64,000 nucleotides of DNA, taken from the IMG/VR virus record IMGVR_UViG_3300033997_000136, positions 124,001-188,000 of that record. The stretch is one strand, 5' to 3'. A program made the position numbers and the translations under genes. This document shows positions 1,498-15,456 of the stretch, in pieces. Each line of letters starts with the position of its first letter. Positions within the stretch are counted from its first letter, which is position 1. The notes below the pieces were generated by a model. The model ran no database searches. It was not told where the DNA came from and saw nothing but the letters and a program-made list of their open reading frames with translations.

Positions 1498-4041
1498 TTA
1501 ATTAACGGCCATCACAGACACGTATGGTAAATCGCGCGCATCAAAACCGTTAACGTTCGTACTTACGTTCAACGAGTTAACAGGTCTTGTATCACTAGAT
1601 TGTTGACTCACCGTACCGTCACCAGACGCATCATTATCACTAGCAAAACCAAATACAGCATAGTTAGTATTCGCTATAGAGTTCAGATAATTTATGCGAT
1701 AACGACCTTGTGAGATTCGAGTAATTGATGACACATTGCTTGAACGCTGGATAGAAGGGGTTGAGTTACCAGAACCCGTACCTAGCCATGCGACAAACAT
1801 AACGATGTTACCACCACCAGTTAACAGTGAATTTAACTGTTGCACTTGTGTAGCAGTCATCACACCCGCATTACCAGTGGTTGCAGCAGCGATAGCTACA
1901 GCACCGCCTGTGGACGAATACAGAGTGACATTACTACCGCCATATGCAGCACTTAGGTTAGTGCCCACATTGACCTGTGCACCGGCTTGGATGCCGTTTA
2001 GTTTAGCCTTATCAGAAGCACTTAACAAACCAGCGTAGCTAGTTGTTGCACCCAAAACAGTACCAGTAGCACCCGTTGATGAGTACATATAACCGTTAGT
2101 AGGGTCAGCACCATAACTAAGGTTAGTAGGAACGTTGACTTGAGCACCAGCTTGGATGCTGTCAATTTTCTGAATATAAGCAGCAGTAACAATACCTGCA
2201 CCTGATGCACTTGCTCGCGGTAAGTTAACACCACTACCTGTTGATGAATATACCGCCGCGTCAACTGTCGATTGTCCAACTGACAGATTAGTACCTACGT
2301 TCACTTGGGCACCAGCTTGGATACCATCTAACTTCGCTTTATCTGCTGCAGATAATGTACCAGCATTAGATTGCGTAGCAGCAGGAAATACTGTGCCGGA
2401 ACCCGTTGATGAACTTACTGTCACATTCGATGCGTTTGCCGTACTGCCTAAATTGGTTGGTACGTTGACTTGAGCACCTGCGGCGATACCATTCAACTTA
2501 GACAACAATGCGTCAGTAAAGTCGTTCTTACTTAATGCATAACCCGTCACTTTATCCACTTTCAAGTTAAGGGCGTTTTGTTGTGCAGTTGAAACAGGTT
2601 TATTTACATCACTGGTGTTATCTGCATTTCCCAAACCTACTTGTGCTTTGGTCACACTGTGTGGGTTATCCGTACGTGCGATGTGTGCGTTAAGTGGTGT
2701 AACCGCTTGTGATGTAATTGCTTCTTTGACACGCAGTGGTGTCATGTACTCAGTATTCACTGTACCAGCAACTGCTTCCGCAGTGGTAGCAATACCGTAG
2801 TTCTCCACGCTACCTAACCCCACTTGCGCTTTAGTGGTTGCATGTGGGTTATCAGTTCTGGCGATGTGTGCGTTTAACGGTGTTACAGCTTGAGCCGTAA
2901 TAGCCTCTTTGACGCGCAGTGGTGTCATATACCGATTAGATACAGTACCCGCAGTCGCTTCAGCAGTTGATGAGATTGGATAATCTTCGACACTACCTAA
3001 TCCCACTTGCGCCTTAGTCGTCGCATGTGGATTGTCAGTACGCGCGATGTGCGCGTTCAGAGGAGTCACTGCCTGCAATGTGATTGCCTGCTTTACTCTC
3101 AGGGGTGTCATGTAAAGAATGTTTGATGTACCTGTTTCAGCAGATGCTTGGTCAGATATTCCATAATTCTCTACACTTCCAAGTCCAACCTGTGCTTTAG
3201 TCGTTGAATGTGGGTTGTTGGTATTCACCAAGTGGTCAGTAATAGGTTTACCATTTCCTGTTTGGAAATAATACGTCATCGCTAACGGAGTCACATAACT
3301 CGTTGCTTGCAACGTTCCTAACATCTGAGCTTGAGTCGATAAACCGTAGTTCTGCACTAACCCTAATCCCACTTGCGCCTTAGTCGTCGCATGTGGGTTA
3401 CTGGTATTGTTGACGTGGCTGTTTAAATTAGCGTTAGTGGTATCGATGCGAGCATGAAGCTCAGCGTCTTTTAAATTTACCCACTGACGCATTTCATCAA
3501 ATGCAGCTTGGTCACCATAAAGAACAGCACGTGTACATCTGTCAACCGCTTCAACCACGTATTCAAAACCGTAGATGTCACCGATGTCATGTAAGTGATG
3601 TACTGGTGTAAATGCGTGAGGTTTGCCTAATAAGTCACCCCAGCGGACGCTGCGATTATCTAAGTTTAAGTTAGCAATTAACTCAAACAGAATATCAACA
3701 ACGCTTGTGTAACGACCACCCACATACCGCAAATCAACTGTAACAGCACTATCCACTTGCGGATTAGTGACTATGATAGCTGCCATGGTTTCTAAACCAC
3801 TGCGTTCACTTGCTTCTTTGTGATACATGACTGGTACGTAATCAACGACAGGAATCAACACACGACCTGTGATAGATTCACGAACCACTAAATCTTTCGT
3901 AGAATAGAAGCAACCCAAACGAGGGATGATAAGACGATTAACACCAGCAGCTAATGTGTGTTGTTCACCGCGTATGTAGTTTGAACTGAGTACACCTTCC
4001 AAATCTAGCGGAAGTGGGGTGGTGATAATAGTATCCGTCAT
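1498..4041 (-). CDS. Tail fibre protein with phiKZ gp145/146-like N-terminal anchor
   Basis: N-terminus SNYIRGEQHTL..IIPRLGCFY..YVGGRY; repeated NPHxTTKAQVGLGxVENY and GIQAGAQVNV units; C-terminal VAW..G..I..SSNVSSITR..GRYRINY receptor-type domain. Confidence 0.85.
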   Translation of the reverse strand: MTDTIITTPLPLDLEGVLSSNYIRGEQHTLAAGVNRLIIPRLGCFYSTKDLVVRESITGRVLIPVVDYVPVMYHKEASERSGLETMAAIIVTNPQVDSAVTVDLRYVGGRYTSVVDILFELIANLNLDNRSVRWGDLLGKPHAFTPVHHLHDIGDIYGFEYVVEAVDRCTRAVLYGDQAAFDEMRQWVNLKDAELHARIDTTNANLNSHVNNTSNPHATTKAQVGLGLVQNYGLSTQAQMLGTLQATSYVTPLAMTYYFQTGNGKPITDHLVNTNNPHSTTKAQVGLGSVENYGISDQASAETGTSNILYMTPLRVKQAITLQAVTPLNAHIARTDNPHATTKAQVGLGSVEDYPISSTAEATAGTVSNRYMTPLRVKEAITAQAVTPLNAHIARTDNPHATTKAQVGLGSVENYGIATTAEAVAGTVNTEYMTPLRVKEAITSQAVTPLNAHIARTDNPHSVTKAQVGLGNADNTSDVNKPVSTAQQNALNLKVDKVTGYALSKNDFTDALLSKLNGIAAGAQVNVPTNLGSTANASNVTVSSSTGSGTVFPAATQSNAGTLSAADKAKLDGIQAGAQVNVGTNLSVGQSTVDAAVYSSTGSGVNLPRASASGAGIVTAAYIQKIDSIQAGAQVNVPTNLSYGADPTNGYMYSSTGATGTVLGATTSYAGLLSASDKAKLNGIQAGAQVNVGTNLSAAYGGSNVTLYSSTGGAVAIAAATTGNAGVMTATQVQQLNSLLTGGGNIVMFVAWLGTGSGNSTPSIQRSSNVSSITRISQGRYRINYLNSIANTNYAVFGFASDNDASGDGTVSQQSSDTRPVNSLNVSTNVNGFDARDLPYVSVMAVN
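2620..3420 (-). repeat. Tandem ~56-58 aa coding repeats (NPHxxTKAQVGLGxVxxY...YMTPLRVKxAI)
   Basis: Five NPH..TKAQVGLG units are visible in the translation. These are fibre-shaft repeats, not CRISPR. Confidence 0.85.
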
Positions 4042-4064: not shown

Positions 4065-4487
4065 TTATTGAAGTGGTAAATTCAAATAAAACTCTTGCTT
4101 AAGTACAACCAGTTTTCGTGGTTCTTTTTCGGTTGCAGGAGCAAGAACACCGTACCGGTCCTCACCCATTAAACGCACTGCAAGATACATTCCTTTTGCA
4201 CGCCACTTAGCGACACCTTCACGAAGTAATAATTCGTAAAATTTCTTATCCGCGTCTTTACGGGATAACTCCGCTGTCGTGTACAACCAATCGTGTACTA
4301 ACGCTGCAACGCGAGTGTGACCTTTAAATAAAACATAAATAAAGGGTAAGCGATAAACAGAATCGAGGTCTGTGTAAAAGCCAGCAGGGACAGTGATACC
4401 ATCCACTTCATACGCTTCTTCCAGTATCCACCATTCGGGTTTGTTAAGCGGGCGCAATAAAGGTTGTTTGTCAATCGGTTTAAACAT
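4065..4487 (-). CDS. DUF1353-like protein
   Basis: TVPAGFYTD, AALVHDWLY, RKDADKKF..GV..MYLAVR motifs; this family commonly lies near phage tail genes. Confidence 0.75.
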   Translation of the reverse strand: MFKPIDKQPLLRPLNKPEWWILEEAYEVDGITVPAGFYTDLDSVYRLPFIYVLFKGHTRVAALVHDWLYTTAELSRKDADKKFYELLLREGVAKWRAKGMYLAVRLMGEDRYGVLAPATEKEPRKLVVLKQEFYLNLPLQ

Positions 4488-4543: not shown

Positions 4544-5833
4544 TTACCACTGATGGTAACACCATTTCCACTGTGAAACACTAGCATTATCTGTGCCTAG
4601 AATAAGTGCTTGAGTTGCTTTGTTCTTAATAGTGCACGCGAATAGATGTTTTTCATTATACGCAGTACAACACAGAAGAACCAATCGATACGTTCCGGGT
4701 TGAAGTGTTATTTCAAACACACTTGATTTAATGTTAAAATGAAGTCCGTCTGAATGGACAGTTCGTGTCATAACACGATCATCTATATACGCTGCAATCA
4801 CTCCATCTCTTGCTTTTGCAAGCACTTGAATTGTTGTCGTCTGAGATATCGTTAACGTAACATACGGGGTGTAATACGCAGTTTCAGGACCTGACGACTC
4901 ATAATAACCCACACCAAATGGATGGTCTGACGAGATAATGGATTGTGATGACACTGTAAAAGGAAAACTAATTGTGTTGAAATTAGCTAATCCTTCTTTG
5001 ATTTTAAATTTAGTGTATGGTGTTACAACAGATTGATAAAATGTTTCCCTACGTTTTACTGATTGGCGAGCAGTAAAGTCGTTAATAAGAGAAGCAATCG
5101 TAGGTTGTCTACCGTTTACTAAATCAATTCGAGGCATTGTGAAATCTGTAAACTCATCTGGGCTTTCTGCGTAATACATAAACGCTCGAATACCCAAACG
5201 AATAGTGTCTGAACGCATCCGAAATTCGTTGTATGCATTGTTTGGATTCACCATCAGTCCATGGTCAGTTATTTTTTCACCTGTCATCCGATACACACCC
5301 GTATCGTCAAACTGTATTTGTGATGTATTACTGTAAGGGCGCATGTGTGAAACAACTAATAACCATTCATCGCAATAAGCTTCATTTAAAAACCCATAGA
5401 AGAAATAAGGATTTGAGTACGTTGTTGTAGAACTACCTAATAAATGAACGTTCAATCCTGTAAAATCAATTGGGTCTTCAGTAGAAGTGTTTGTTGCGTA
5501 CACACCAAAATAAATCCGACCTATTAATGTATTTTGAGTTTTATGTCTTTTTACAAACATACATAACCGGTACACTTGGTTAGGGTCTACTGGTTTTAAT
5601 TTAGTAATAAAACCACCATCGGGACCTGGTGGCGATACATTGCGACTACGTGCCTGTTGAGACACAATAATACACGACCCTGCGGGCGATAATCGCGCTA
5701 TCTTTGTATTTTCTGGAGGAAATGTTTCATCTCCATTTAAACTACCTAAATCAGTAAACGCAGAACCTGCTAGTGGTGACAATAGATTATTATCTACCAT
5801 CGCTTCATTAAAGCCTTGCAATGATTCTAACAT
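4544..5833 (-). CDS. Hypothetical tail-associated protein, beta-rich, possible carbohydrate-binding modules
   Basis: 429-aa ORF inside the fibre cassette; aromatic beta-rich segments (YRLCMFVKR, NPYFFYG, EWLLVVSH). Confidence 0.5.
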   Translation of the reverse strand: MLESLQGFNEAMVDNNLLSPLAGSAFTDLGSLNGDETFPPENTKIARLSPAGSCIIVSQQARSRNVSPPGPDGGFITKLKPVDPNQVYRLCMFVKRHKTQNTLIGRIYFGVYATNTSTEDPIDFTGLNVHLLGSSTTTYSNPYFFYGFLNEAYCDEWLLVVSHMRPYSNTSQIQFDDTGVYRMTGEKITDHGLMVNPNNAYNEFRMRSDTIRLGIRAFMYYAESPDEFTDFTMPRIDLVNGRQPTIASLINDFTARQSVKRRETFYQSVVTPYTKFKIKEGLANFNTISFPFTVSSQSIISSDHPFGVGYYESSGPETAYYTPYVTLTISQTTTIQVLAKARDGVIAAYIDDRVMTRTVHSDGLHFNIKSSVFEITLQPGTYRLVLLCCTAYNEKHLFACTIKNKATQALILGTDNASVSQWKWCYHQW

Positions 5834-5897: not shown

Positions 5898-6449
5898 TTA
5901 AACTCCAGCAGCGTCTTTTACGTTCCAGCTTTCAACCATGATAGCTTCACAGTGGTCAAACACAGCATTACACATCTCAACTGCTTCTTGTGGAGTCAAT
6001 ACGTGTGTGTTGTTATTTTGACTTCTGAAATGAAACACCGTGGTATCGTTTGCAGATATACGGTCTTGTGCGCGAGACTTTAACGCAATCAAGTTAATCA
6101 TGTCTTGTGGTCTGGTTTGAACGTAGTCTTCACCATCGTTGAATATCCAGAGCATCCCTTCAAAGAATTTCTGTTCACGTACAGTGTTTGCGCGGTCAGC
6201 TAATTCCTGAACAGTGAATGGACGTGAAGTAAACGCTTGAACATAAACGTTCTCTTCCACTTGATGGATGGGAGCGATTTCTTCAACCACATCACCTTCG
6301 GGGCGAATAGATGGTAACACTTTCGCATAACCCAGCTCCGCTAACAAATCGTCATCTGGGTCCGTTGGAATACTCATGTCTGGGTGTTCCATACGGATGC
6401 TGTGAAGCGTTGCTGGATAAAAACCAGTCGCTAATTTAATGTAATTCAT
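5898..6449 (-). CDS. Tail fibre assembly protein (DUF4376-like C-terminus)
   Basis: YPATLHSIR..P..SIP..L.ELGY.KV N-terminus and VQTRPQDMINL..FRSQNN..LT C-terminus; immediately downstream of a fibre gene. Confidence 0.65.
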   Translation of the reverse strand: MNYIKLATGFYPATLHSIRMEHPDMSIPTDPDDDLLAELGYAKVLPSIRPEGDVVEEIAPIHQVEENVYVQAFTSRPFTVQELADRANTVREQKFFEGMLWIFNDGEDYVQTRPQDMINLIALKSRAQDRISANDTTVFHFRSQNNNTHVLTPQEAVEMCNAVFDHCEAIMVESWNVKDAAGV

Positions 6450-6460
6450 CTACGCACTCC

Positions 6461-9208
6461 TTAAGCGCTTGGACCAACAGAGCCGTAAACAACTCCATCG
6501 ATATACGTTAAAATAATCATCGTCCAGTTAGCAGCTAACACTGGGGCTAAGCCATCTGCCCATTGAACACCGGCTGGCCAGTTTGTCGCTCTGTTACCGA
6601 TCACTTGCAATACAACACTCATAGAGCGTGTAGCCGCTGGTGGGTTAGTAATAGAGATAGTTCTGGTTGAACCTGGGTCGGTAATTTTCCACACTTGTGA
6701 TGTAGCTAAGTTTACAGCGCCAGTAGATGTTCCTAACAATAATGAATACTTGTTAAGTAACGTACCATCGCCTGATTTTGTAAACAGATCATCCAAACGA
6801 CTACGATCCACAGCACGCATCAAACCAGCATCAGTTGCGCTCGCATTTAACAGAGTTATCGTGTTACCAGTCGATGAACTGATGTCTATATCGAACAAAC
6901 CTACTCTGGTGATACTTAAGTTTGTGGCCACATTCACTTGAGCGCCTGCGGCGATGCCGTCTAACTTAGTTTTATCAGCAGAAGACATTACACCAGCTAA
7001 AGATGTAGTTGCAACAGGGAGTGAAGCGCTAGAACCCGTAGAAGATGTCACAGGAACCGTAGTGGTTGTGCGAGTACCTACACCTAAGTTCGTCGCAACG
7101 TTCACTTGGGCACCAGCTTGGATACCATCTAACTTTGTCTTCATGGCTGATGCGTTCCACCACGCGTTAATCGCTTGGAACACGCGCTGTGCAGTCCAAG
7201 CACGGCGAGTAGTCGCTGTACCAGCTTCAGCTTCTGCTTGTGTGATAGTAGCGGCAGTCCACTCACGAGCGTCTGTGAGACGCGCATCAGATGTATCTAC
7301 TTTTAAATCCAAAGCAGCTTGTAAACCAGCAATAGACGCAATGCTTAACGAATCTAACTCAGCGCGGTTTAACTTGATATAATCCACAATTTCTTGCAAC
7401 TCATCAAGTGTAGTGTCATCAGACGTTAACAGTGTGTTAATACTGTCAATCAACCCTTTTAACACTTTACCTTGTTCAGCAGATAACGGAACTGTTGTTC
7501 CACCAGCAGTCAAGTTATTGACAACCGATGCGATGTTTAACTTTAAGTTCAGTGCAGTTTGCTGCGCTGTACTGACTGGTTTGTTAGCATCAGATGTGTT
7601 ATCGACGTTAGCTAAACCTACATCAGCTTTCACTAATGTCACAGCACCGGTTTTACTGGCTACTGAGGTTACGGTGTTAACCTGTGCTCCAGTTTCAATA
7701 CCGTCTAATTTGGTTTTGAATGTCGAAGACGCCCACCATGCAGCGATTGCTTGAAATACGCGTAATGGTGTAAATGCAAAGCGAGAGGTAGAGATACCAG
7801 CTTCTGCGTCCGCTTGGCTTACTGTAGATGCAGTCCACTCACGAGCATTTGTTAAGCGAGTATCGTTGATACCTACTTTGTTAGCTTCCAACCCATCTGT
7901 TAGTTGTTTTAAGACGTAACCTTGGTTAGCTGTTAATGGTTCTATGCTACCCGGACTGGTTAAGTTATCGACCGTTGCTGGAATAGATAAATTCCAATCA
8001 GAAGACCACACTACATTGTTATCAACACCATTACTGAGTGCTGTATTACAGTGACGAGTGAAACGTTTATTAGTTGCGTTTTCTTGCGCTACAAAACTAA
8101 TCCGTTTAGACGTTGTACCAAACACGACTACGGAGAACTCCATCGCTACTGAAGAATTCAAACCAGGGAACGCACTTGGTAGTGCTGTAAACTGGTAAAT
8201 ACCTTGTGGAATAGCACCCAATACAGTTTTGTCCTGACTGTAGAACGGGTCTCTGGATGTTCCTGTTAAGAAGTTAACATACTGCACAGGAATCGCAGTG
8301 ATATCAGCTTTTAAATCTAGCGCAGCCTGCAATCCAGCGATTGATGCGATGTTCAGTGATTCCAAATCTGCGCGGTTTAACTTGATGTAATCCACAATTT
8401 CTTGTAGTTCATCTAACGTACCGTCGTCAGTTTGTAACACAGAGTTAATCGTATCGATTAAACCCTTTAACACACGACCTTGATTTGCTGATAAAGCTGC
8501 AGCACCATCTGTCGATGTCAAGTTATCAATCACGTCACTTGCATCTAACTTGGTTTCGTTTAATGCATCAGTTAATGCTTTTAACGCAACACCTTGTGCT
8601 GCGGACAACGCTTTAGCTGGGTCATTCGTGATTAAGTTATTCACAACTTCCACAGTTGTACCAAATGAGTGGTATGCACCTGTGTCGTAGTAATACGCGA
8701 CACTAGTGTCGCGAGCTACGTAGATAACTTTCTCTTGACCTATTTGTGGGAAACCTGCAAACGTCGTGAAGAACTCGTAAGCAATACCAGTATCTGGTGC
8801 ACCGCTAAATAAGTTATCTGTAGAGATAACCACCAGGCGACCCGCTGTCTCTGCAGTATGTGTTACTGTGATAGTTTCTTCTGTCACTTGAATTGACGGA
8901 AAATACGCGTAACCATTTGTGTCATACGCTTGAACAGTGACGTCTGTTGAGCCAAAAACGTTATCCACGTTCCATGTAAAGACTGGAATCGTTTGGATAT
9001 GAGTTTTCACCATACCAGCACGACCTAATGGAACCCACACAGTCGTTGCATTTTCACCAGAACCTAAAATTGCGCTTAACCACAATTGATTCTGATAAAT
9101 AGCAAGAATGTGTGCTTCTGCGGTAGGCGACAATTCAGACACCGTACCTGTAAACCGGGTTTGACCTTGGTTCACTGTATTTTGTAACACTCGTACTGAC
9201 CGAGTCAT
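6461..9208 (-). CDS. Tail fibre protein with internal duplications
   Basis: Repeated NNL..LSAxQGxxLK, DELQEIVDYIK, KLDGIxAGAQVN and LTKADVGL-type motifs; C-terminal TISITNPP..WPAGVQWADGLAP domain. Confidence 0.8.
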   Translation of the reverse strand: MTRSVRVLQNTVNQGQTRFTGTVSELSPTAEAHILAIYQNQLWLSAILGSGENATTVWVPLGRAGMVKTHIQTIPVFTWNVDNVFGSTDVTVQAYDTNGYAYFPSIQVTEETITVTHTAETAGRLVVISTDNLFSGAPDTGIAYEFFTTFAGFPQIGQEKVIYVARDTSVAYYYDTGAYHSFGTTVEVVNNLITNDPAKALSAAQGVALKALTDALNETKLDASDVIDNLTSTDGAAALSANQGRVLKGLIDTINSVLQTDDGTLDELQEIVDYIKLNRADLESLNIASIAGLQAALDLKADITAIPVQYVNFLTGTSRDPFYSQDKTVLGAIPQGIYQFTALPSAFPGLNSSVAMEFSVVVFGTTSKRISFVAQENATNKRFTRHCNTALSNGVDNNVVWSSDWNLSIPATVDNLTSPGSIEPLTANQGYVLKQLTDGLEANKVGINDTRLTNAREWTASTVSQADAEAGISTSRFAFTPLRVFQAIAAWWASSTFKTKLDGIETGAQVNTVTSVASKTGAVTLVKADVGLANVDNTSDANKPVSTAQQTALNLKLNIASVVNNLTAGGTTVPLSAEQGKVLKGLIDSINTLLTSDDTTLDELQEIVDYIKLNRAELDSLSIASIAGLQAALDLKVDTSDARLTDAREWTAATITQAEAEAGTATTRRAWTAQRVFQAINAWWNASAMKTKLDGIQAGAQVNVATNLGVGTRTTTTVPVTSSTGSSASLPVATTSLAGVMSSADKTKLDGIAAGAQVNVATNLSITRVGLFDIDISSSTGNTITLLNASATDAGLMRAVDRSRLDDLFTKSGDGTLLNKYSLLLGTSTGAVNLATSQVWKITDPGSTRTISITNPPAATRSMSVVLQVIGNRATNWPAGVQWADGLAPVLAANWTMIILTYIDGVVYGSVGPSA

Positions 9209-9262
9209 ACGTGATACTCCTTCGAATAAACAATAAAAAAGATGGACTTCAGTTCGAAGTCA

Positions 9263-9469
9263 TCACGAACTAGATAAACGTGGGCTACCTACTAAATATG
9301 TTTCATTAGCTGTGACGTCAATGGCGCATTTTAGTAGTCGGCGCTGTTCTTTGAGTAAACTTACTTTCTGTTCAACCGTCAGTTGTTCAGATGCAGTACG
9401 AATGTCTCGAACAGTTTGTTGCATTGGTATTAACCATGCTGCCATTTGTTTTGTAAAAGGAGAATTCAT
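9263..9469 (-). CDS. Small hypothetical protein (helical)
   Basis: 68-aa ORF whose start overlaps the stop of the upstream ORF by 4 nt, indicating translational coupling. Confidence 0.55.
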   Translation of the reverse strand: MNSPFTKQMAAWLIPMQQTVRDIRTASEQLTVEQKVSLLKEQRRLLKCAIDVTANETYLVGSPRLSSS

Positions 9470-9657
9470 GACTCTATCTCCAACGATTGAATTAACATTA
9501 ATAGTTGATTATCTATGTCAGTTAACTGTTGATTCAGGGTTTGTTTTGCACCGCGACCTAAAGGAAGTCGGTGATTTAATGTACTTAAGAATGAAATCGA
9601 TTCACTGAGTTTATGTTCGATTTGTTCAATCTCATTATTAAATAAATTGGTATCCAT
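9466..9657 (-). CDS. Small hypothetical protein (coiled-coil-like)
   Basis: 63-aa ORF with an AGGTG RBS, directly after the 9686 hairpin. Confidence 0.55.
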   Translation of the reverse strand: MDTNLFNNEIEQIEHKLSESISFLSTLNHRLPLGRGAKQTLNQQLTDIDNQLLMLIQSLEIES

Positions 9658-9685
9658 AATACACCTTTTTGTGTAGACATAGAAA

Positions 9686-9709
9686 ACTGGGAGAGCGAAC
9701 TCTCCCAGT
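9686..9709. terminator. Terminator hairpin
   Basis: ACTGGGAGAG-CGAA-CTCTCCCAGT just after the stop of 9718..10755. Confidence 0.7.
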
Positions 9710-9717
9710 GTTAGCTA

Positions 9718-10755
9718 TTAAGCGATAGCAGCTAAGTTTTCTTTCTTCTCAACCACAGCGATAACGTTCACTGCTTCGGAAGCTTCGATTACAATGCTGT
9801 TACCATCTGCAGAGTTACGTACAGATACTACGTCGTTGTAGTAGTGGCCTGATACTTCGTCTTTTACCCACACAGTCACAGCAACGTTCTTGCTGTCAAA
9901 GTTGTGAGTGATGGTGTGCAATACGTTTGCAACAGTAGACTCGTAGCGAGCTACGTTGCCGTTGATAGCTACGCGCAGAGCATCTACTTTTGTAGCGTCA
10001 TCAGCAACAGCTTTCAACTGAGTATCTAAACGACCTAATGCATCAGCTACAGAAGAGCTGGCGTCTAAGTAGTTTGTACCAGTTGGTGTAACGTAGTTAC
10101 CAGATGCATCCAGGCCAACAGCGGCTTTTACAGCAGCCATCTGAGTTAACAGAGTAGATACTGAAGAACTTAAGTTGGTTAACTGAGTGCGAACAGCAGC
10201 AGCTAAACGAACAGTGAATCCGGTGTCGGAAGAACCAGTGACTTCAACTTCATCAGCAGTACCTTGTACTTCTGAGTTGCTGTTGTCAATAACGTCATAA
10301 CCACCTAAGCTGTTGAACAGAACACCGTCTTTTGCTTTAACAAATTTGGTGTCTGCAGCTAACGTGACATAACCGTCGCCAGTGGCTTTGTAGTAATGGC
10401 CTGATTCACCGTTTAAGGTGCCTAAGTCAAACGCAGAACCCGTATCGGCACCTGGAGTGATAGTACCACGGTAAGAGAACGCAGCACCTAATGCAGCGAT
10501 TTCACTGTCAACGTACGAACGTAACTCTGTGTCTAAATCAGCAATTGCTGCTTCTAATTCAGAGGTATCGCCGATAGCGATGGCAGTTGGGTTACCAGTT
10601 ACTAATTTACTGTACTTGATAACACCTTCAGTCGTGTTGAACCAAATACGTGGTACAGTTAACGGTGTTGGGTCGGCAGCTAACTGCTCTGGTACTAAGT
10701 TATAGAACTGAGAACCAGCAGCTAAACGAATATTGTGAAACTCAATAGGACGCAT
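9718..10755 (-). CDS. Virion/tail fibre-associated structural protein
   Basis: Strong codon bias (TTC, AAC, GCT, TAC); coiled-coil segments; YVTPTGTNYLD; C-terminal HTITHNFD beta module. Confidence 0.6.
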   Translation of the reverse strand: MRPIEFHNIRLAAGSQFYNLVPEQLAADPTPLTVPRIWFNTTEGVIKYSKLVTGNPTAIAIGDTSELEAAIADLDTELRSYVDSEIAALGAAFSYRGTITPGADTGSAFDLGTLNGESGHYYKATGDGYVTLAADTKFVKAKDGVLFNSLGGYDVIDNSNSEVQGTADEVEVTGSSDTGFTVRLAAAVRTQLTNLSSSVSTLLTQMAAVKAAVGLDASGNYVTPTGTNYLDASSSVADALGRLDTQLKAVADDATKVDALRVAINGNVARYESTVANVLHTITHNFDSKNVAVTVWVKDEVSGHYYNDVVSVRNSADGNSIVIEASEAVNVIAVVEKKENLAAIA

Positions 10756-10874
10756 TGAAGATACCTCATGCTAAACAATTTATGGTGAGGAAACAGTCAT
10801 CTGCTTCCCTTACTGTATTCGGTGAACTTACAAACCAACTTTAAAAAAACCTCATACATAGGATTTGTCGTATT

Positions 10875-11459
10875 TTATTCGATAACTTCGCCTAAAACCG
10901 TTTCCCATGAAAGTGGGTGTGCATACGCAGATGTTTCCACCGAAACAACATCTTTCGTTTCATTACGTGTCACTTCACAGCGCAATGTATTTTTTGTGTT
11001 GGTAAAAGCTAAACCGCTTTCTGGTGTATAAAGTGCGACGTGTGATGCTTGAACCACAGAGTGTCCCTTAATAGAGAACACACTTGTATTTCGAAGAATG
11101 TTACGCGCCATCGTAGATTCAAATGTAGGAGTTAGCTTATGTGCTAATACTACACTTAAAAAATGTTCCATGACTTTTGTCAATAGAAAATCAATATCAA
11201 TATTTGCCACTGGAATGTTAAAACAAAACTGAACTTCACCGGTGTTATCAGATTTGTAAAATGGTGCATTTAAGAAAACAGTGCCGTCGGTTGGTTTCTC
11301 CGACAACATCTTCATCGAGTACACCACATGACGGACATGTATGGGTGCTGGATAAGTGAAGATTTTAATTTCATAAGGTTTAAAATACTGCAACCCTATT
11401 TTTTTATTCATGTACACCATTTGTCGTGCTAAAAATAAACCGTGGTCAAAGGTTTCCAT
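10875..11459 (-). CDS. Hypothetical protein
   Basis: 194-aa ORF with a GAGG RBS; no recognised motif. Confidence 0.6.
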   Translation of the reverse strand: METFDHGLFLARQMVYMNKKIGLQYFKPYEIKIFTYPAPIHVRHVVYSMKMLSEKPTDGTVFLNAPFYKSDNTGEVQFCFNIPVANIDIDFLLTKVMEHFLSVVLAHKLTPTFESTMARNILRNTSVFSIKGHSVVQASHVALYTPESGLAFTNTKNTLRCEVTRNETKDVVSVETSAYAHPLSWETVLGEVIE

Positions 11460-11481
11460 TTAATTCCTCACAAAAGAAAAA

Positions 11482-11507
11482 TAGGAGAGGGGAATTCCCC
11501 TCTCCTA
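11482..11507. terminator. Perfect 26-bp palindrome / terminator
   Basis: TAGGAGAGGGGAATTCCCCTCTCCTA immediately after the stop of 11511..13559. Confidence 0.75.
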
Positions 11508-11510
11508 GTG

Positions 11511-13559
11511 TTAATAAGGTACGTAAAACGTGACATATGCCACTAACGTCCGAGCTTCAGTTAACGTGATTGTTATCTGGTTTGAATTCGTTGTATCAAT
11601 CGAGGCAAAGATTGGATTGTTATCAATCGCATCTTTTAACACCACCGAGTAATCTTCCGTATTCATGTTGTGTGTGATACTTATGGTCTCAGTATCTGCT
11701 GAGGTAAAACGACGTGTAATTGCACGAACGTAAGATGCGTCACGTACATCATTAAATGGGTTTTGCAATTTACTTTTCAGCAATTGAACACCCACATACG
11801 CTTGTGTATTTGTATCGTAATCTTCAACTGTTCCCAATCTCAGATTTTCCACACTACCAAGACCCACCTGTGCTTTTGTTACAGCATGTGGATTCTCTTG
11901 ATTTGAAATGTGGTTTGTAATCTGTGTTTGAATTGGGTTAAACCATTGCAATAACACACTTGGCGTTAAATACGTTGTGTTACTATTCTGAGTTACATCA
12001 GTTGCCGTTGCAACAGCATAGTTTTGTACTAATCCTAATCCCACTTGGTCTTTAGTGACTTGGTGTGGATTGTCTCTAGCATCAACGTGAGTGGTTATTG
12101 TTGTTGCAACAAACGAGACCATAGCTTCTTTCACACGAAGTGGAGTCATGTAACTTGCGTTATCAGTACCCGCTTCAGCCACAACTTTTGTTGCAACCGC
12201 GTAGTTCTCTACGCTACCTAATCCCACTTGCGCCTTTGTAGTCGCATGTGGATTATCGGTGCGTTGAGTGTGAGCAGTCAATGGAGTAATGGCTTGTAAA
12301 ACAATGGCTTCACTGACTCGAAGTGGAGTCATGTATTTTGTGTTACTAGCTCCTTCTTCAGCTTCTTGTTTTGTAGCCACACCGTAGTTTTCAACATCAC
12401 TTAACCCCACTTGAGTCTTAGTCACTTGGTGAGGGTTATTTGTACTATTGATGTGAGACGATGTATCAGTTAAACGACCGTTAACAAAAGCAACGACACC
12501 CGCAGGTGTTGCGTAATGTGTGGTACTACCAGAGGTGTAATCGTCAATACCTGCTATTTCAAAGTTTTGAACATTACCTAAACCTACCTGAGTTTTGGTC
12601 GTGTTGTGTGGGTTACTTGTACTACTAATGTGTTGTACAATGGCTAAACCACTACCCGCAGCAAAATACGTCGCAAGAGACGCAGGTGTCATGTATTTAT
12701 CAGATGGAAGTGTTGTGCCACTCATGTCTGATGTACTTGCGATACCGTAGTTCTGAACGTTACTTAACCCCACTTGAGTTTTAGTGGTCTCATGTGGATT
12801 GTTCTTATCAGCGACGTGTTCTGCAACACCACCTTCAGAGAGCTGTGCAATTAATGAACGAGTTAATGAAGGTGTCATTAGCTTGTCTTGTGCACCAGCG
12901 CCATCTAAATCAGATAACAATGCTACTGCAAAGTTAGGCACATTGCCAAGACCTACTTGCTCTTTAGTGACTTGGTGAGGGTTAGCTAAGTTGTTGATGT
13001 GCTCGTCAGGAGTTTGACCACCTGTGTTTCCAGTGATAGCTTCTGCTAAGTTGTGAATACTTTCAACCAACTCAGTCGCACCTACCATGTCATCTAAATC
13101 CCACTCGTGGTCGATGACAGGGAAACCATACGGTAGTTCTTGAACTTCTTCCCATGCAGTGATACGTGGGTTTACTGCGTTGCTTAGCAGCAATTCTAAC
13201 GCACGTGCTTCATCAATCTGCCAATCACCACCTAAGTAACGAATACGTTCAACAGCGATTGTACCTGCAAGTGTTCTATCTAAAATACAGATAGCACCAT
13301 ATACAGGTTTTGCAGTAGCACGTGATGCACTAACAAACGGCCAACCTAAGTGGTAATCTACACCGTTCACTAGTTGACGACCAGATGGGTAATGGACTAG
13401 CTTTAAATCACGTTCAAAGAAAGGACCAGACTTTGGTACGATGAAATAAAAATCAGGAGTCACATCCGGTGGAGCAATGATGTGCTGTTCATCGGTGCGA
13501 ACGTTTGACGCAGCCGTCCCGGTAGGGTCAAACGGGTAACGTAAAGTAATATCAGACAT
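11511..13559 (-). CDS. Tail fibre protein with phiKZ gp145/146-like N-terminal anchor
   Basis: YPFDPTGTAASN..DEQH..FIVPKSGPFF..GVDY N-terminus typical of phiKZ-like fibres; seven NPHxxTKxQVGL repeats. Confidence 0.85.
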   Translation of the reverse strand: MSDITLRYPFDPTGTAASNVRTDEQHIIAPPDVTPDFYFIVPKSGPFFERDLKLVHYPSGRQLVNGVDYHLGWPFVSASRATAKPVYGAICILDRTLAGTIAVERIRYLGGDWQIDEARALELLLSNAVNPRITAWEEVQELPYGFPVIDHEWDLDDMVGATELVESIHNLAEAITGNTGGQTPDEHINNLANPHQVTKEQVGLGNVPNFAVALLSDLDGAGAQDKLMTPSLTRSLIAQLSEGGVAEHVADKNNPHETTKTQVGLSNVQNYGIASTSDMSGTTLPSDKYMTPASLATYFAAGSGLAIVQHISSTSNPHNTTKTQVGLGNVQNFEIAGIDDYTSGSTTHYATPAGVVAFVNGRLTDTSSHINSTNNPHQVTKTQVGLSDVENYGVATKQEAEEGASNTKYMTPLRVSEAIVLQAITPLTAHTQRTDNPHATTKAQVGLGSVENYAVATKVVAEAGTDNASYMTPLRVKEAMVSFVATTITTHVDARDNPHQVTKDQVGLGLVQNYAVATATDVTQNSNTTYLTPSVLLQWFNPIQTQITNHISNQENPHAVTKAQVGLGSVENLRLGTVEDYDTNTQAYVGVQLLKSKLQNPFNDVRDASYVRAITRRFTSADTETISITHNMNTEDYSVVLKDAIDNNPIFASIDTTNSNQITITLTEARTLVAYVTFYVPY

Positions 13560-13651
13560 AGTTCAGACCTCAACCGGTGCTGGGTTTTAATAAATGATAT
13601 AGTCTGTTTTAAAGACTCCATACCATAACGACCACTTCATTGGAGCTGCTT

Positions 13652-14887
13652 ATGTATAGTTATGTCAGCGCTTTAGGAATTTTGAATCAGCGGAACAGTC
13701 GTTGGACTGACGTTGATTTACAAAACGTTCCTTTTAGCCACATATTTGAACACTACAAAGATGTGATTGTGCATCTTTCTAACCCACATATAAGCGAAGT
13801 GGTACATATTCGTTTAGCTTTTTTTATTGACAAACAGGTTGCAGTCAATCAGACGATAAACCAGTGGCTCGTGTCAAATGGTTCAAACACAATAAATGCA
13901 ACACCGGGTGTGATTGAATTAAAGCCAAAAACTGTCTTGTATAAAGATGCAGTGCAGGCTGATTTTACGATACGTCCTGTGAAGATGGGAACGCATCACG
14001 ACATTGACTGGCCACTCGATGTAGCCAGAGATTTGTTGTTGATAAAAGAAAACGTTGATTATTTAGACATGTACAATCATTGTCTTGTCACTGTCAACGG
14101 ACTCCTTCATCGAACTTCATTTAGCGTGAATGGTTTGTATGTTGTGGACGGCGCATACTCTCGTACCTTGTGTAACGATGTCAATGTGGGTATACTTAAC
14201 TTCAAAGACGTAGGTGGTCTTGAATTTGTTAACCTACGGTCTGATATGTTGTTCTCACCTAAACCAGATAACAAGCTGTACAATCGAGCATATATTAAAT
14301 CCCCAGTTCCACTGAATGATAAAGTTGTTTTATTATCATTAGGTGGTTATCTACATGTGCTTGATAATGTATACCGGGTTATTGGTGACAACACCATGGT
14401 GATTGACTTTAACAATCTACCCATACTTGAACGTTACTTTGAAAGTTGTAAGGTGATAGATTTATCATCGTTGCAGCTAAGTAAAAGTTCTCGAAATAAA
14501 GACCAAGTGGTTGTAGATGAATTAATTGCTAATGAAGATACCATTCGACGTTACATTGATTTATCGCAATCGTTTTTAATTTTAGTGGACACGCCTAGTT
14601 TTTACAAAACAATGCATTTGTTAAAACCGGGTGTGACTACTGGAAGTTTTGTCACTCCCCTGTTACCTAAATGGCCGTTACGTACGTTAAATGGCAAATT
14701 GATGGAGTATTACTCCCGTCAAGATAACGAATTGTTTATGCTGCATTGCACCAGCTATTTAATTCCTAACTATCAATTTACAACCACCCACTGGCAAGAG
14801 TTAACCAGTGTGTCTAACAGCGCAGTTCCATTTGAACCTGTAGTGAAAGACCGTGGTTTCTTTTTAGAGATGGGGCGAGACTTTTAA
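13652..14887 (+). CDS. Conserved phiKZ-like virion structural protein
   Basis: ATG after GGAG. CLVTVNGLLH, VGILNF and LSLGGYLH motifs are recalled from phiKZ-like virion proteins found near the spike genes. Confidence 0.6.
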   Translation: MYSYVSALGILNQRNSRWTDVDLQNVPFSHIFEHYKDVIVHLSNPHISEVVHIRLAFFIDKQVAVNQTINQWLVSNGSNTINATPGVIELKPKTVLYKDAVQADFTIRPVKMGTHHDIDWPLDVARDLLLIKENVDYLDMYNHCLVTVNGLLHRTSFSVNGLYVVDGAYSRTLCNDVNVGILNFKDVGGLEFVNLRSDMLFSPKPDNKLYNRAYIKSPVPLNDKVVLLSLGGYLHVLDNVYRVIGDNTMVIDFNNLPILERYFESCKVIDLSSLQLSKSSRNKDQVVVDELIANEDTIRRYIDLSQSFLILVDTPSFYKTMHLLKPGVTTGSFVTPLLPKWPLRTLNGKLMEYYSRQDNELFMLHCTSYLIPNYQFTTTHWQELTSVSNSAVPFEPVVKDRGFFLEMGRDF

Positions 14888-14889
14888 TT

Positions 14890-14911
14890 GGAGAGGACAT
14901 TTGTCCTCTCC
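14890..14911. terminator. Terminator hairpin
   Basis: GGAGAGGACA-TT-TGTCCTCTCC followed by TTTATT. Confidence 0.7.
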
Positions 14912-14937
14912 TTTATTCCCTAATGTGTGGTGGATGT

Positions 14938-15456
14938 ATGTTAGAATTTACACCTGTTGTGTTTTCAAAAACGTTGATGTATGACAATTTAACGCTGTTT
15001 GCAAATAACCCACAATGGACATGGAACGCAACCTACGGTTGGCGACGTGATGTTAACGCAGGTGATACTGAGTTTATGGTGGAGGTAGGGTATATCCCTG
15101 TTCCAATAAATCGTATTCGTAAATTAAAACAAATTGAAGCATTGTTTTCATCGTTTTACAATACACCTGAAAATTGTTTAGGTACAAACATCTTGAAGAT
15201 TAATTTTCAAGATGGGACATTTAAGTACATTGGAACAAGTGATAGCCATTCTGATGGAGCCAAAGGTCAATTCATGTACAATGGTGATTTACCTGATGAA
15301 TCGTTAACTCCGACTAATGTTATCAATCGCGTTATTCGTTACACTATCCCACTTGATAAAACACCAGTTTCCATTGGTTTAATCTCAAGTGGGTTTTATG
15401 CCATTTACCCATTTACATTACGCGGATTTAAAGATTTAAAACTTACATTCTGGTGA
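14938..15456 (+). CDS. Hypothetical protein
   Basis: Beta-rich ORF; likely start at ATG 14938; no recognised family. Confidence 0.6.
   Translation: MLEFTPVVFSKTLMYDNLTLFANNPQWTWNATYGWRRDVNAGDTEFMVEVGYIPVPINRIRKLKQIEALFSSFYNTPENCLGTNILKINFQDGTFKYIGTSDSHSDGAKGQFMYNGDLPDESLTPTNVINRVIRYTIPLDKTPVSIGLISSGFYAIYPFTLRGFKDLKLTFW

What the first reader, a model, noticed from the sequence alone, without database searches (positions are those of the whole stretch)
8820..11720. Shared ~60-aa beta module at the ends of three fibre-locus proteins suggests a branched fibre system
The same pattern (xTITHN..S.DV.V...D......I......I.I) occurs at the C-terminus of 11511..13559 (TISITHNMNTEDYSVVLKD), the C-terminus of 9718..10755 (HTITHNFDSKNVAVTVWVKD) and near the N-terminus of 6461..9208 (TWNVDNVFGSTDVTVQAYD). 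The anchored 11511 fibre ends in this module rather than a receptor domain, and the 6461 fibre has no phiKZ-type baseplate anchor. Inference: the module is a docking adaptor that attaches secondary fibres to primary ones.
Basis: partly seen in the sequence, partly recalled or inferred. Interest (0 to 1): 0.6.

Follow-up and report, generated by a model that had tools for sequence, protein, structure and literature searches.

The report
Shared junction module in phage fibre cassette
Three tail-fibre proteins of this phiKZ-like jumbo phage share a small, so far unnamed beta-sandwich domain that marks a fibre gene cassette conserved in many phages, and its placement suggests, without proving, that it joins fibre proteins to one another.

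Summary
The three segments are divergent copies of one ~65-75-aa beta-sandwich module: P0003 C-terminus (11514-11714), P0002 C-terminus (9721-9948) and P0001 residues 66-133 (8810-9013). Pairwise BLAST sees nothing. Profiles do: HHalign probability is 95-96% and class-specific HMMs score 25-41 bits.

The module has no Pfam family and no sequence relative in the PDB. It occurs in at least 391 protein clusters, and in 144 of the 148 best it lies at the extreme C-terminus.

The main new result is comparative. In 9 of 11 independent phage lineages the gene order is the same:
- a protein ending in the module;
- a P0002-type fibre (conserved N-domain, stalk, C-terminal module);
- often two small ORFs;
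- a protein that starts with a ~60-aa domain plus the module and then carries a variable distal part (fibre, lectin, Peptidase_S74).

The window follows this order: P0003, P0002, two unannotated ORFs, P0001. P0003 is the phiKZ gp131 orthologue.

The docking reading is therefore plausible (about 0.5) but unproven, because the one complex prediction gave no verdict. Synteny pairs P0002 with P0001, not P0003 with P0001. The rivals are a distal adhesin knob or a trimerisation cap.

The parts
11514..11714 (-). Module copy 1: C-terminal beta-sandwich module of P0003 (residues ~616-682).
   Evidence: HMM E 4.5e-6 and 1.4e-7 against the phage's own ORFs. HHalign probability 95.4%. About 30 bits against the class A, B and C1 HMMs. 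95% identical in close relatives, as conserved as the anchor, while the shaft is 60-80% identical.
11511..13559 (-). P0003, 682 aa: phiKZ gp131-type baseplate-anchored fibre. It has an N-terminal anchor (residues ~6-205; 12945-13544), seven NPH..TK.QVGL repeats and a C-terminal module. It occupies cassette position A.
   Evidence: phrog_13857 and phrog_2163, E ~1e-138 to 1e-140. 38% identity to the phiKZ gp131 N-terminus, E 1e-41. The divergently transcribed neighbour 13640-14887 is the gp130 homologue, E 1e-55. Syntenic with Goslar gp29.
10875..11459 (-). P0004, 194 aa, unknown function, between P0003 and P0002.
   Evidence: No Pfam or PHROG hit. Atlas search gave only weak leads.
9718..10755 (-). 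P0002, 345 aa: cassette position B fibre. It has a conserved N-domain (residues 1-72; 10540-10755; motif RIWFNTT), a helical stalk and a C-terminal module.
   Evidence: N-domain HMM E 2e-24. 92 of the 148 best module-bearing proteins have this N-domain. Homologues P0009-P0013.
9721..9948 (-). Module copy 2: C-terminal module of P0002 (residues ~270-345).
   Evidence: Seed of the profile search. AF2 model with pLDDT 90, a 6-7-strand beta-sandwich. Best class is B, 38.6 bits.
9466..9657 (-). Unannotated small ORF 1 (63 aa, predicted helical) at the conserved position between fibre B and fibre C.
   Evidence: ORF list. Positional counterparts of 75-103 aa in L054, L055, L056 and L058. Sequence similarity is not significant.
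9263..9469 (-). Unannotated small ORF 2 (68 aa), a conserved partner gene of the cassette.
   Evidence: A leave-one-out HMM from L054-L056 hits it at E 3.6e-5, the top hit among 522 window ORFs. Also found in L058 and L060.
9014..9208 (-). pN: ~65-aa N-terminal domain of P0001, homologous to the N-terminus of phrog_21918 proteins (WVPL motif).
   Evidence: phrog_21918 E 1e-8. Alignment with Yoloswag gp87 and others. The pN HMM also hits the position C proteins of L054-L060.
8810..9013 (-). Module copy 3: divergent module directly after pN in P0001 (residues ~66-133).
   Evidence: HHalign 95.6% to the phrog_21918-type module 1; 95.4% (with those sequences) to the deep profile. Class C1 HMM 40.6 bits, class A HMM 25.3 bits.
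6461..9208 (-). P0001, 915 aa: cassette position C fibre without a gp131-type anchor. It has pN, the module, a Phage_fiber_rpt shaft with an internal duplication, and a small C-terminal tip domain.
   Evidence: PF22337 E 6e-25. Tail-fibre PHROGs. No anchor. Relatives keep both ends and differ by deletions in the shaft.
1498..4041 (-). P0005, 847 aa: second gp131-type anchored fibre of the locus. It carries no module.
   Evidence: phrog_2163 E 8.5e-147. Anchor HMM E 3e-48. No module hit.

Best explanation
The three segments are copies of one unnamed ~70-aa beta-sandwich module. This module is the hallmark of a conserved phage fibre cassette with three positions:
- Position A: a protein that ends in the module. 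Here this is P0003, the gp131-type fibre anchored on the baseplate.
- Position B: a fibre with a conserved ~70-aa N-domain, a stalk and a C-terminal module. Here this is P0002.
- Position C: a protein that begins with a ~60-aa pN domain plus the module and then carries a variable distal part. Here this is P0001.

The most likely mechanism is inferred, not shown. The module would be a protein-protein junction element. The module at the distal (C-terminal) end of one fibre would form the seat for the N-terminal pN+module of the next protein. The conserved pair is P0002 and P0001, possibly helped by the two small ORFs encoded between them. P0003's terminal module would tie this assembly to the baseplate-anchored fibre. 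The unanchored fibres would thus be carried by the anchored one, in series or as branches.

Shown: homology of the three copies, the fold class, the module's positions within proteins, and the conserved gene order. Inferred: binding, its partners and the geometry.
For: 1. Homology of the three copies is established by profiles.
2. Gene order is conserved. A P0002-type fibre is followed, directly or within a few genes (about 5 kb downstream in L007), by a pN+module protein in the window, in the Yoloswag/AD1/NCTB/fHe-Yen9-02 group and about 35 IMG/VR loci, and in L007, L054, L055, L056, L058, L059 and L060. That is 9 of 11 lineages; L005 and L061 are the exceptions. A protein ending in the module lies upstream in most of them.
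3. The distal part of the position C protein is highly variable, while pN+module is constant. It ranges from 200 aa with a second module to 396, 470, 761, 944 and more than 2363 aa (the last with Peptidase_S74). This is the usual signature of an N-terminal attachment adaptor.
4. The module can be the only N-terminal domain in front of a ConA-like lectin (L029; PF13385, E 4.6e-19) or of ~480-aa bodies (L030, L032).
5. Free-standing single-module proteins of ~75 aa sit in the same cassettes. A lone module of this size in a fibre cassette is more easily explained as a co-assembling part.
6. Modules are orthologous by position: 37-54% identity at the same position across loci, against 29-30% between positions. 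This fits fixed, distinct places in one assembly.
7. P0003's module is as conserved among close relatives as its anchor (95%), while the shaft is 60-80% identical.
8. Goslar and Xoo-sp14, whose gp131-type fibres end differently, have no module anywhere in their genomes and no P0002-type or pN gene detected in the ~20-kb fibre loci that were scanned.
Against: - There is no direct evidence of binding. The only complex prediction (3 copies of the P0003 C-terminus with 3 copies of the P0001 N-terminus) gave no verdict.
- In 144 of the 148 best homologues the module is at the extreme C-terminus of fibrous stalks. That is also where receptor-binding knobs and trimerisation caps sit.
- Other jumbo phages carry gp131-type anchors followed by four tandem modules, in the place where phiKZ gp131 has its putative host-binding propeller. 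Tandem arrays are typical of adhesin or Ig-like domains.
- Weak fold resemblance (Z 4.4-6.6) is mostly to C-terminal beta-sandwich domains of tailspikes, pyocin fibres and sialidases.
- Conserved gene order can also arise from co-function without direct contact.
- The Yoloswag-type phages have the cassette but no gp131-type anchor, so the link to P0003 in particular is the weakest step.
Confidence: 0.5

Rival explanations
1. The module is a distal knob: a C-terminal head that caps trimeric stalks and binds host-surface carbohydrate, acting as an accessory adhesin. It is shared among fibre genes by domain shuffling, and the fibres attach to the virion by other means.
For: The module is at the C-terminus in 144 of 148 homologues. 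It follows collagen, YadA-stalk and PTL_trimer stalks and occurs in 'tail fiber' and collagen-repeat phage proteins. Tandem arrays of four follow gp131-type anchors, where phiKZ gp131 has its putative host-binding propeller (PMC13250141). Fold matches are weak and mostly to C-terminal domains of tailspikes and pyocin fibres.
Against: It does not explain the module placed directly behind pN at the N-terminus of fibres up to more than 2363 aa long, which have their own distal domains. It does not explain the module placed N-terminal to a lectin domain, the free ~75-aa single-module proteins, or the fixed A-B-C gene order. P0003's module is not hypervariable among relatives.
Confidence: 0.25
2. 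The module is a purely intramolecular structural element: a trimerisation or folding nucleus, or a spacer at fibre ends. It has no role in joining different proteins. The cassette order reflects only common descent and co-expression.
For: The module is always next to trimeric fibrous segments. It is a small, stable beta-sandwich with a confident model. C-terminal registration domains are common in collagen-like and coiled-coil fibres (established knowledge, e.g. the T4 fibritin foldon).
Against: Free single-module proteins and the 200-aa pN+2-module proteins have no stalk to nucleate. Positional orthology over deep divergence and the variable-cargo pattern of the position C proteins point to a role between proteins.
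Confidence: 0.15
3. The resemblance of the P0001 segment to the other two is convergent or due to chance, and only P0002 and P0003 share the module.
For: There is no significant direct hit of the P0002-seeded profiles on P0001 (E 0.58; HHalign 14.7%). The HN motif is replaced by DN.
Against: There are in-register transitive links at 95-96% HHalign probability. An HMM built only from C-terminal (class A) modules of other phages scores 25.3 bits, and the class C1 HMM scores 40.6 bits. P0001 residues 1-135 align with phrog_21918 proteins over their full length.
Confidence: 0.03

Closest known systems
T4 gp10-like branching or docking domains of branched receptor-binding systems (G7C gp63.1/gp66, CBA120 TSP2/TSP4, phiKp24 gp306; PMC9700779)
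   Same: These are small beta-rich domains, repeated among fibre or spike proteins of one locus, that let secondary receptor-binding proteins hang on a primary one. The secondary proteins have a conserved N-terminal adaptor and variable distal parts.
   Different: No sequence or profile relation was found: no Pfam hit, and gp10 is not among the fold matches listed. The gp10-like domains lie in the N-terminal part of the primary protein. Here the module is at the C-terminal end of A and B and just after pN in C. Binding is proven for the gp10 systems and not here.
phiKZ gp131-family N-terminal anchors forming a hetero-hexameric fibre base under gp130 (PMC13250141)
   Same: P0003 and P0005 carry this anchor, next to a gp130 homologue. 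In phiKZ too, paralogous fibre proteins share a domain that brings them together at one site.
   Different: That shared domain is the N-terminal anchor, not the module. phiKZ gp131 ends in a seven-bladed propeller. P0003 ends in the module, and P0001 and P0002 lack the anchor.
T4 long tail fibre joint (gp34-gp35-gp36-gp37), known from general knowledge and not tested here
   Same: Consecutive genes encode a proximal fibre, small connector proteins and a distal fibre joined end to end. Here the order is fibre, two small ORFs, fibre.
   Different: No homology was tested or is claimed. The T4 joint parts do not share a common repeated module.
phrog_21918 proteins of 'hairy' jumbo myoviruses (Yoloswag gp87, AD1_094, NCTB 120, fHe-Yen9-02 g319c)
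   Same: They have the same pN domain and first module as P0001 residues 1-135 (E 1e-8), and the same position directly after a P0002-type fibre gene.
   Different: They are 200-aa proteins with a second module where P0001 has a long fibre. Those phages add one or two free single-module genes and have no gp131-type anchor. Function is unknown.

Membership tests
HNL-type fibre module (unnamed; defined here by profile A3 and the 193-module HMM) | Significant profile match over ~60 columns, including the strand ending in (H/W)-x-x-x-H-N-L and the N-x-(I/L/V)-x-(I/V) strand. | tested here: met
   P0002 is the seed. P0003: E 4.5e-6 and 1.4e-7, HHalign 95.4%. P0001: met only through intermediates and class HMMs, 95.6%/96.0% and 40.6/25.3 bits; its HN is replaced by DN.
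HNL-type fibre module | Compact beta-sandwich fold. | tested here: met
   The AF2 model of the P0002 module built with 116 sequences has pLDDT 90 and pTM 0.77. BFVD and Atlas matches reach TM 0.7-0.84 to the ends of phage fibre proteins. The copies in P0001 and P0003 were not folded.
T4 gp10-like docking domain | Sequence or profile similarity to gp10-like domains. | tested here: not met
   Pfam scans of the whole proteins and of the three segments gave no such hit.
T4 gp10-like docking domain | Fold match to gp10, CBA120 TSP or G7C domains. | tested here: inconclusive
   None of these is among the matches listed by Foldseek or VIA-align. All listed matches have Z of 6.6 or less, which is generic for beta-sandwiches.
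phiKZ gp131-type baseplate anchor | N-terminal ~200 aa homologous to the gp131 N-terminus, next to a gp130 homologue. | tested here: met
   P0003 against phiKZ gp131: 38% identity, E 1e-41. The gp130 homologue gives E 1e-55. P0005 also matches. P0001 and P0002 do not match.
phrog_21918 | Profile match over pN and the first module. | tested here: met
   P0001 residues 50-145 against profile positions 47-142, E 2e-7 and 1e-8. The second module of the family is absent from P0001.
Classical phage Ig-like domains (Big_2, I-set, FN3) | Pfam match. | tested here: not met
   No hit at E up to 10 for the three segments.
Fibre-fibre docking adaptor (functional class) | Physical binding between module-bearing partners. 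| tested here: inconclusive
   Complex prediction gave no verdict. No experimental data exist.

The most novel reading that the evidence does not exclude
The module, together with the pN domain and the P0002-type N-domain, forms a widespread and so far undescribed plug-and-socket system. With it, phages of several lineages (phiKZ-like, 'hairy' jumbo myoviruses and smaller myoviruses) would chain or branch fibre proteins. Free 75-aa modules would act as caps or connectors, and cargo domains (lectins, Peptidase_S74 fibres) would be swapped behind a constant adaptor.
Probability: 0.4. Interest if true: 0.75.

Novelty: new variant of a known kind. Interest (0 to 1): 0.6.

Why it matters
How the peripheral fibres of phiKZ-like and other jumbo phages are built is still unresolved. 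The fibres are not modelled in the Goslar map, and in the phiKZ atlas only the gp131-like N-terminal fibre bases were fitted while the extended fibre could not be modelled (PMC13742148, PMC13250141). A conserved cassette with a constant adaptor and variable cargo would:
- give a concrete, testable assembly plan for these fibres;
- give a name and a role to a large unannotated domain family (at least 391 clusters, no Pfam entry);
- provide a possible handle for exchanging receptor-binding parts in laboratory phage work, as is done with the known branching domains.

It also adds two real small genes to the annotation of this locus.

Tried and rejected
- Pairwise BLASTP of the three segments: nothing significant.
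- Thin family profiles alone: only weak signals, P 1.6e-4 and 0.004.
- Word-index searches with the P0003 and P0001 segments: close relatives only.
- Single-sequence AF2 of whole P0002: unusable, pLDDT 39.
- Complex prediction of 3 copies of P0003 residues 590-682 with 3 copies of P0001 residues 1-140: no verdict, score 0.00, folded without alignments. This is not evidence either way.
- PDB sequence search with the module profile and with P0003: no relatives.
- Foldseek and VIA-align against the PDB: only generic beta-sandwich matches, Z 6.6 or less. These included T4 gp9 C-terminal domain (Z 5.5), the Pam1 tailspike and the R2 pyocin fibre. None is trusted as a family assignment.
- Homology between the P0002-type N-domain and pN: aligned in register but not significant, P 0.011-0.35.
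- Homology of P0007 to Yoloswag gp85 and of P0004 to Goslar gp28: none.
- Small ORF 1 (9466-9657): similarity to its positional counterparts is not significant.
- A weak extra module candidate outside the window (own genome 89600-90211, E 0.014 with a thin profile) was not confirmed by the deep profile, E 0.81.
- The 80-85-aa sugar-binding region of phiR1-37 Gp298 (PMC13030884) was considered. It lies in a T4 gp37/gp12-like fibre with a Tfa chaperone. No link to the module was found, and it was not tested by sequence.
- The read-mapping tools were not used.
Full report
**Setting.** The window is bases 124001-188000 of a 213-kb phage contig. The finding lies in a minus-strand fibre locus:
- P0003 (11511-13559, 682 aa)
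- P0004 (10875-11459)
- P0002 (9718-10755, 345 aa)
- P0001 (6461-9208, 915 aa)
- P0007 (5898-6449)
- P0006 (4544-5833)
- P0008 (4065-4487), a tail-fibre assembly chaperone
- P0005 (1498-4041, 847 aa)

P0003 and P0005 are the only proteins of the genome with the phiKZ-type anchor. P0003 residues 8-210 are 38% identical to the N-terminus of phiKZ gp131 (E 1e-41). The divergently transcribed gene 13640-14887 is the gp130 homologue (E 1e-55). The locus is syntenic with Goslar gp30/gp29-gp25. In phiKZ the fibre bases are six gp131-like N-domains seated under gp130, and gp131 ends in a propeller thought to bind the host (PMC13250141). In Goslar the fibres could not be resolved (PMC13742148).

A profile of six P0002-family modules (A2) was searched against 1.84 billion representatives. 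It found 391 clusters at E 1e-3 or better, and 221 at 1e-10 or better. An HMM of 193 modules from those hits holds no sequence of P0003 or P0001. It finds P0003 residues 622-677 at E 4.5e-6 as the only significant non-self hit among 1088 six-frame ORFs of the phage. HHalign gives 95.4%.

P0001 is more divergent. Its residues 1-135 align over their full length with 200-aa proteins of jumbo phages (Yoloswag gp87, AD1_094, NCTB 120, fHe-Yen9-02 g319c). Those proteins consist of a ~60-aa N-domain (pN) and two tandem modules with the motif W.V.HNLG. HHalign links the P0001-family module to their first module at 95.6%, and that module to the deep profile at 96.0%.

HMMs built per cassette position, without any window sequence, gave these scores:

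| Window segment | Best-scoring class HMMs |
|---|---|
| P0001N | C1 40.6 bits; A 25.3 bits |
| P0002C | B 38.6 bits |
| P0003C | A, B and C1 about 30 bits each |

All three are therefore copies of one domain family, at about 23-29% mutual identity.

**What the module is.** AF2 with 116 sequences gives a confident small beta-sandwich (pLDDT 90). It has no Pfam family and no sequence relative in the PDB. PDB fold matches are generic. The best Z is 6.6, and many are C-terminal domains of tailspikes, pyocin fibres and a sialidase, plus T4 gp9 at Z 5.5. In predicted-structure libraries it recurs at TM 0.7-0.84 at the ends of phage proteins with collagen, YadA-stalk or PTL_trimer stalks. It also appears as ~70-170-aa proteins, including a 73-aa Yoloswag protein.

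Of the 148 best hits:
- 144 have the module within 10 residues of the C-terminus, and 24 have 2-4 tandem copies;
- 92 share P0002's N-terminal ~70-aa domain (motif GR.WFNTT);
- 15 have the gp131-type anchor, most of them followed by three or four tandem modules.

**The conserved cassette.** Scanning fetched loci with the HMMs showed a fixed gene order.

In the Yoloswag/AD1/NCTB/fHe-Yen9-02 group and 36 IMG/VR loci (down to 35% identity) the order is:
1. in the more divergent loci (L027-L045), an upstream protein ending in a module;
2. a 500-960-aa fibre ending in a module, with P0002's N-domain detected in L010-L025, L028, L035 and L045 and below threshold in the rest;
3. a pN+2-module protein;
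4. a ~75-aa single-module protein;
5. a second such protein, or a larger protein that starts with the module.

In L029 that last protein is a module followed by a Laminin_G_3 lectin (E 4.6e-19). In L030 and L032 it is a module followed by ~480 aa.

Seven further P0002-type fibres were taken from unrelated contigs. Six show the same order of upstream module-ending protein (where the contig allows), P0002-type fibre, and then a protein starting with pN+module. In most of them one or two small ORFs lie between the two fibres. They differ as follows:

| Locus | Small ORFs between fibres | Position C protein |
|---|---|---|
| L054 | two | 396 aa |
| L055 | two | 470 aa |
| L056 | two | 944 aa |
| L058 | two | 761 aa |
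| L059 | none | more than 998 aa |
| L060 | one longer ORF containing the small-ORF-2-like region | more than 2363 aa, with Peptidase_S74 |

L007 has the pair about 5 kb apart. L005 and L061 lack a detectable position C protein. That makes 9 of 11 lineages with the pair.

The window matches exactly: P0003 (A), P0004, P0002 (B), ORF 9466-9657, ORF 9263-9469, P0001 (C). The second small ORF is a real conserved gene, since a leave-one-out HMM hits it at E 3.6e-5.

Further points:
- Modules are orthologous by position (37-54% against 29-30% identity).
- Goslar and Xoo-sp14 have no module in their whole genomes.
- The Yoloswag-type genomes have no gp131-type anchor.

**Interpretation.** By the usual logic of phage receptor-binding proteins, a constant N-terminal part with variable distal cargo is the attachment side. 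That is the pattern of the position C proteins, including P0001. Free single-module proteins and module-lectin fusions are hard to explain unless the module binds other parts of the fibre apparatus. The module at the distal end of A and B is then the natural seat.

The conserved pair is P0002 and P0001, and P0003, as the gp131 orthologue, supplies the link to the baseplate. None of this shows contact. The one complex prediction returned no verdict. The strong C-terminal bias, the four-module arrays at the place of the gp131 propeller, and the fold resemblance to tailspike C-terminal domains keep an adhesin or knob role alive, as well as a trimerisation-cap role.

I put the junction reading at about 0.5, the adhesin knob at 0.25, a purely structural cap at 0.15, and the rest on other explanations.

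**Comparison and novelty.** Docking domains that build branched fibre systems are known (T4 gp10-like domains; PMC9700779), as is the shared gp131-type anchor (PMC13250141). The module is related to neither by sequence and sits at other positions in the proteins. It is best filed as a new variant of a known kind: a candidate fibre-joining module family and cassette, with the function still to be shown.

**Limits.** The lineage count rests on 11 sampled lineages that share ancestry. The contig may be incomplete, since relatives lie on a 305-kb contig.

Noticed in passing
window 9263-9469 and 9466-9657 (minus strand): Two small ORFs (68 and 63 aa, overlapping by ATGA) fill the 510-nt 'gap' between P0002 and P0001. 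The 68-aa one is conserved next to P0002-type fibres in unrelated contigs (E 3.6e-5). The 63-aa one has only positional counterparts.
   Followed up: yes
window 11482-11507, 9686-9709, 9245-9261 (minus strand): Terminator-like GC hairpins with T runs lie directly after the stops of P0003, P0002 and the 68-aa ORF. The scan found 13 sites against 4.0 +/- 2.2 expected in the 5-kb stretch. The fibre genes may therefore be separate or attenuated transcription units.
   Followed up: no
window 6461-9208 (P0001 residues ~226-300 and ~574-640): There is an internal duplication of a ~65-aa helical segment (LSA.QG.VLKGLID...DELQEIVDYIKLNRA...IAGLQAALDLK). Close relatives of 523-909 aa keep both ends of the protein and differ by large deletions in the shaft.
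   Followed up: partly
window 13640-14887 (plus strand): This gene is the homologue of phiKZ gp130 (27% identity, E 1e-55), the outer-baseplate protein under which the phiKZ fibres attach. It is divergently transcribed from P0003, as gp130 is from gp131.
   Followed up: yes
window 4544-5833 (P0006) and 4065-4487 (P0008): P0006 (429 aa) has no family hit, only a weak lead to CBM_4_9/PA14-type carbohydrate-binding proteins. It is followed by a tail-fibre assembly chaperone (phrog_1158). It may be a further receptor-binding protein with no recognisable anchor or module.
   Followed up: partly
L005:8001-9701 and proteins P0023-P0034: Other jumbo-phage contigs encode ~560-aa proteins with a gp131-type anchor followed by four tandem copies of the module. 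They lie next to a P0002-type gene and FG-GAP (propeller) paralogues.
   Followed up: partly
L029:6833-7747; L030:4592-6235: These proteins have the module as their very N-terminus, followed by a Laminin_G_3/ConA-like lectin domain (L029) or by a ~480-aa body (L030). They occupy the cassette position that in other phages holds a free 75-aa module protein.
   Followed up: yes
L001-L004, L010-L025 (Yoloswag, AD1 and relatives): The cultured phages that carry the fullest cassette belong to the 'hairy Myoviridae' (PMC6143709). Whether the cassette encodes the tail hairs is unknown.
   Followed up: no
L007 (104-kb contig), genes around 6342-7520 and 14510-15070: There the module cassette is interleaved with DUF7941 genes, the family proposed to form a head-to-tail 'fiber cloud' in Goslar (PMC13742148).
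   Followed up: no
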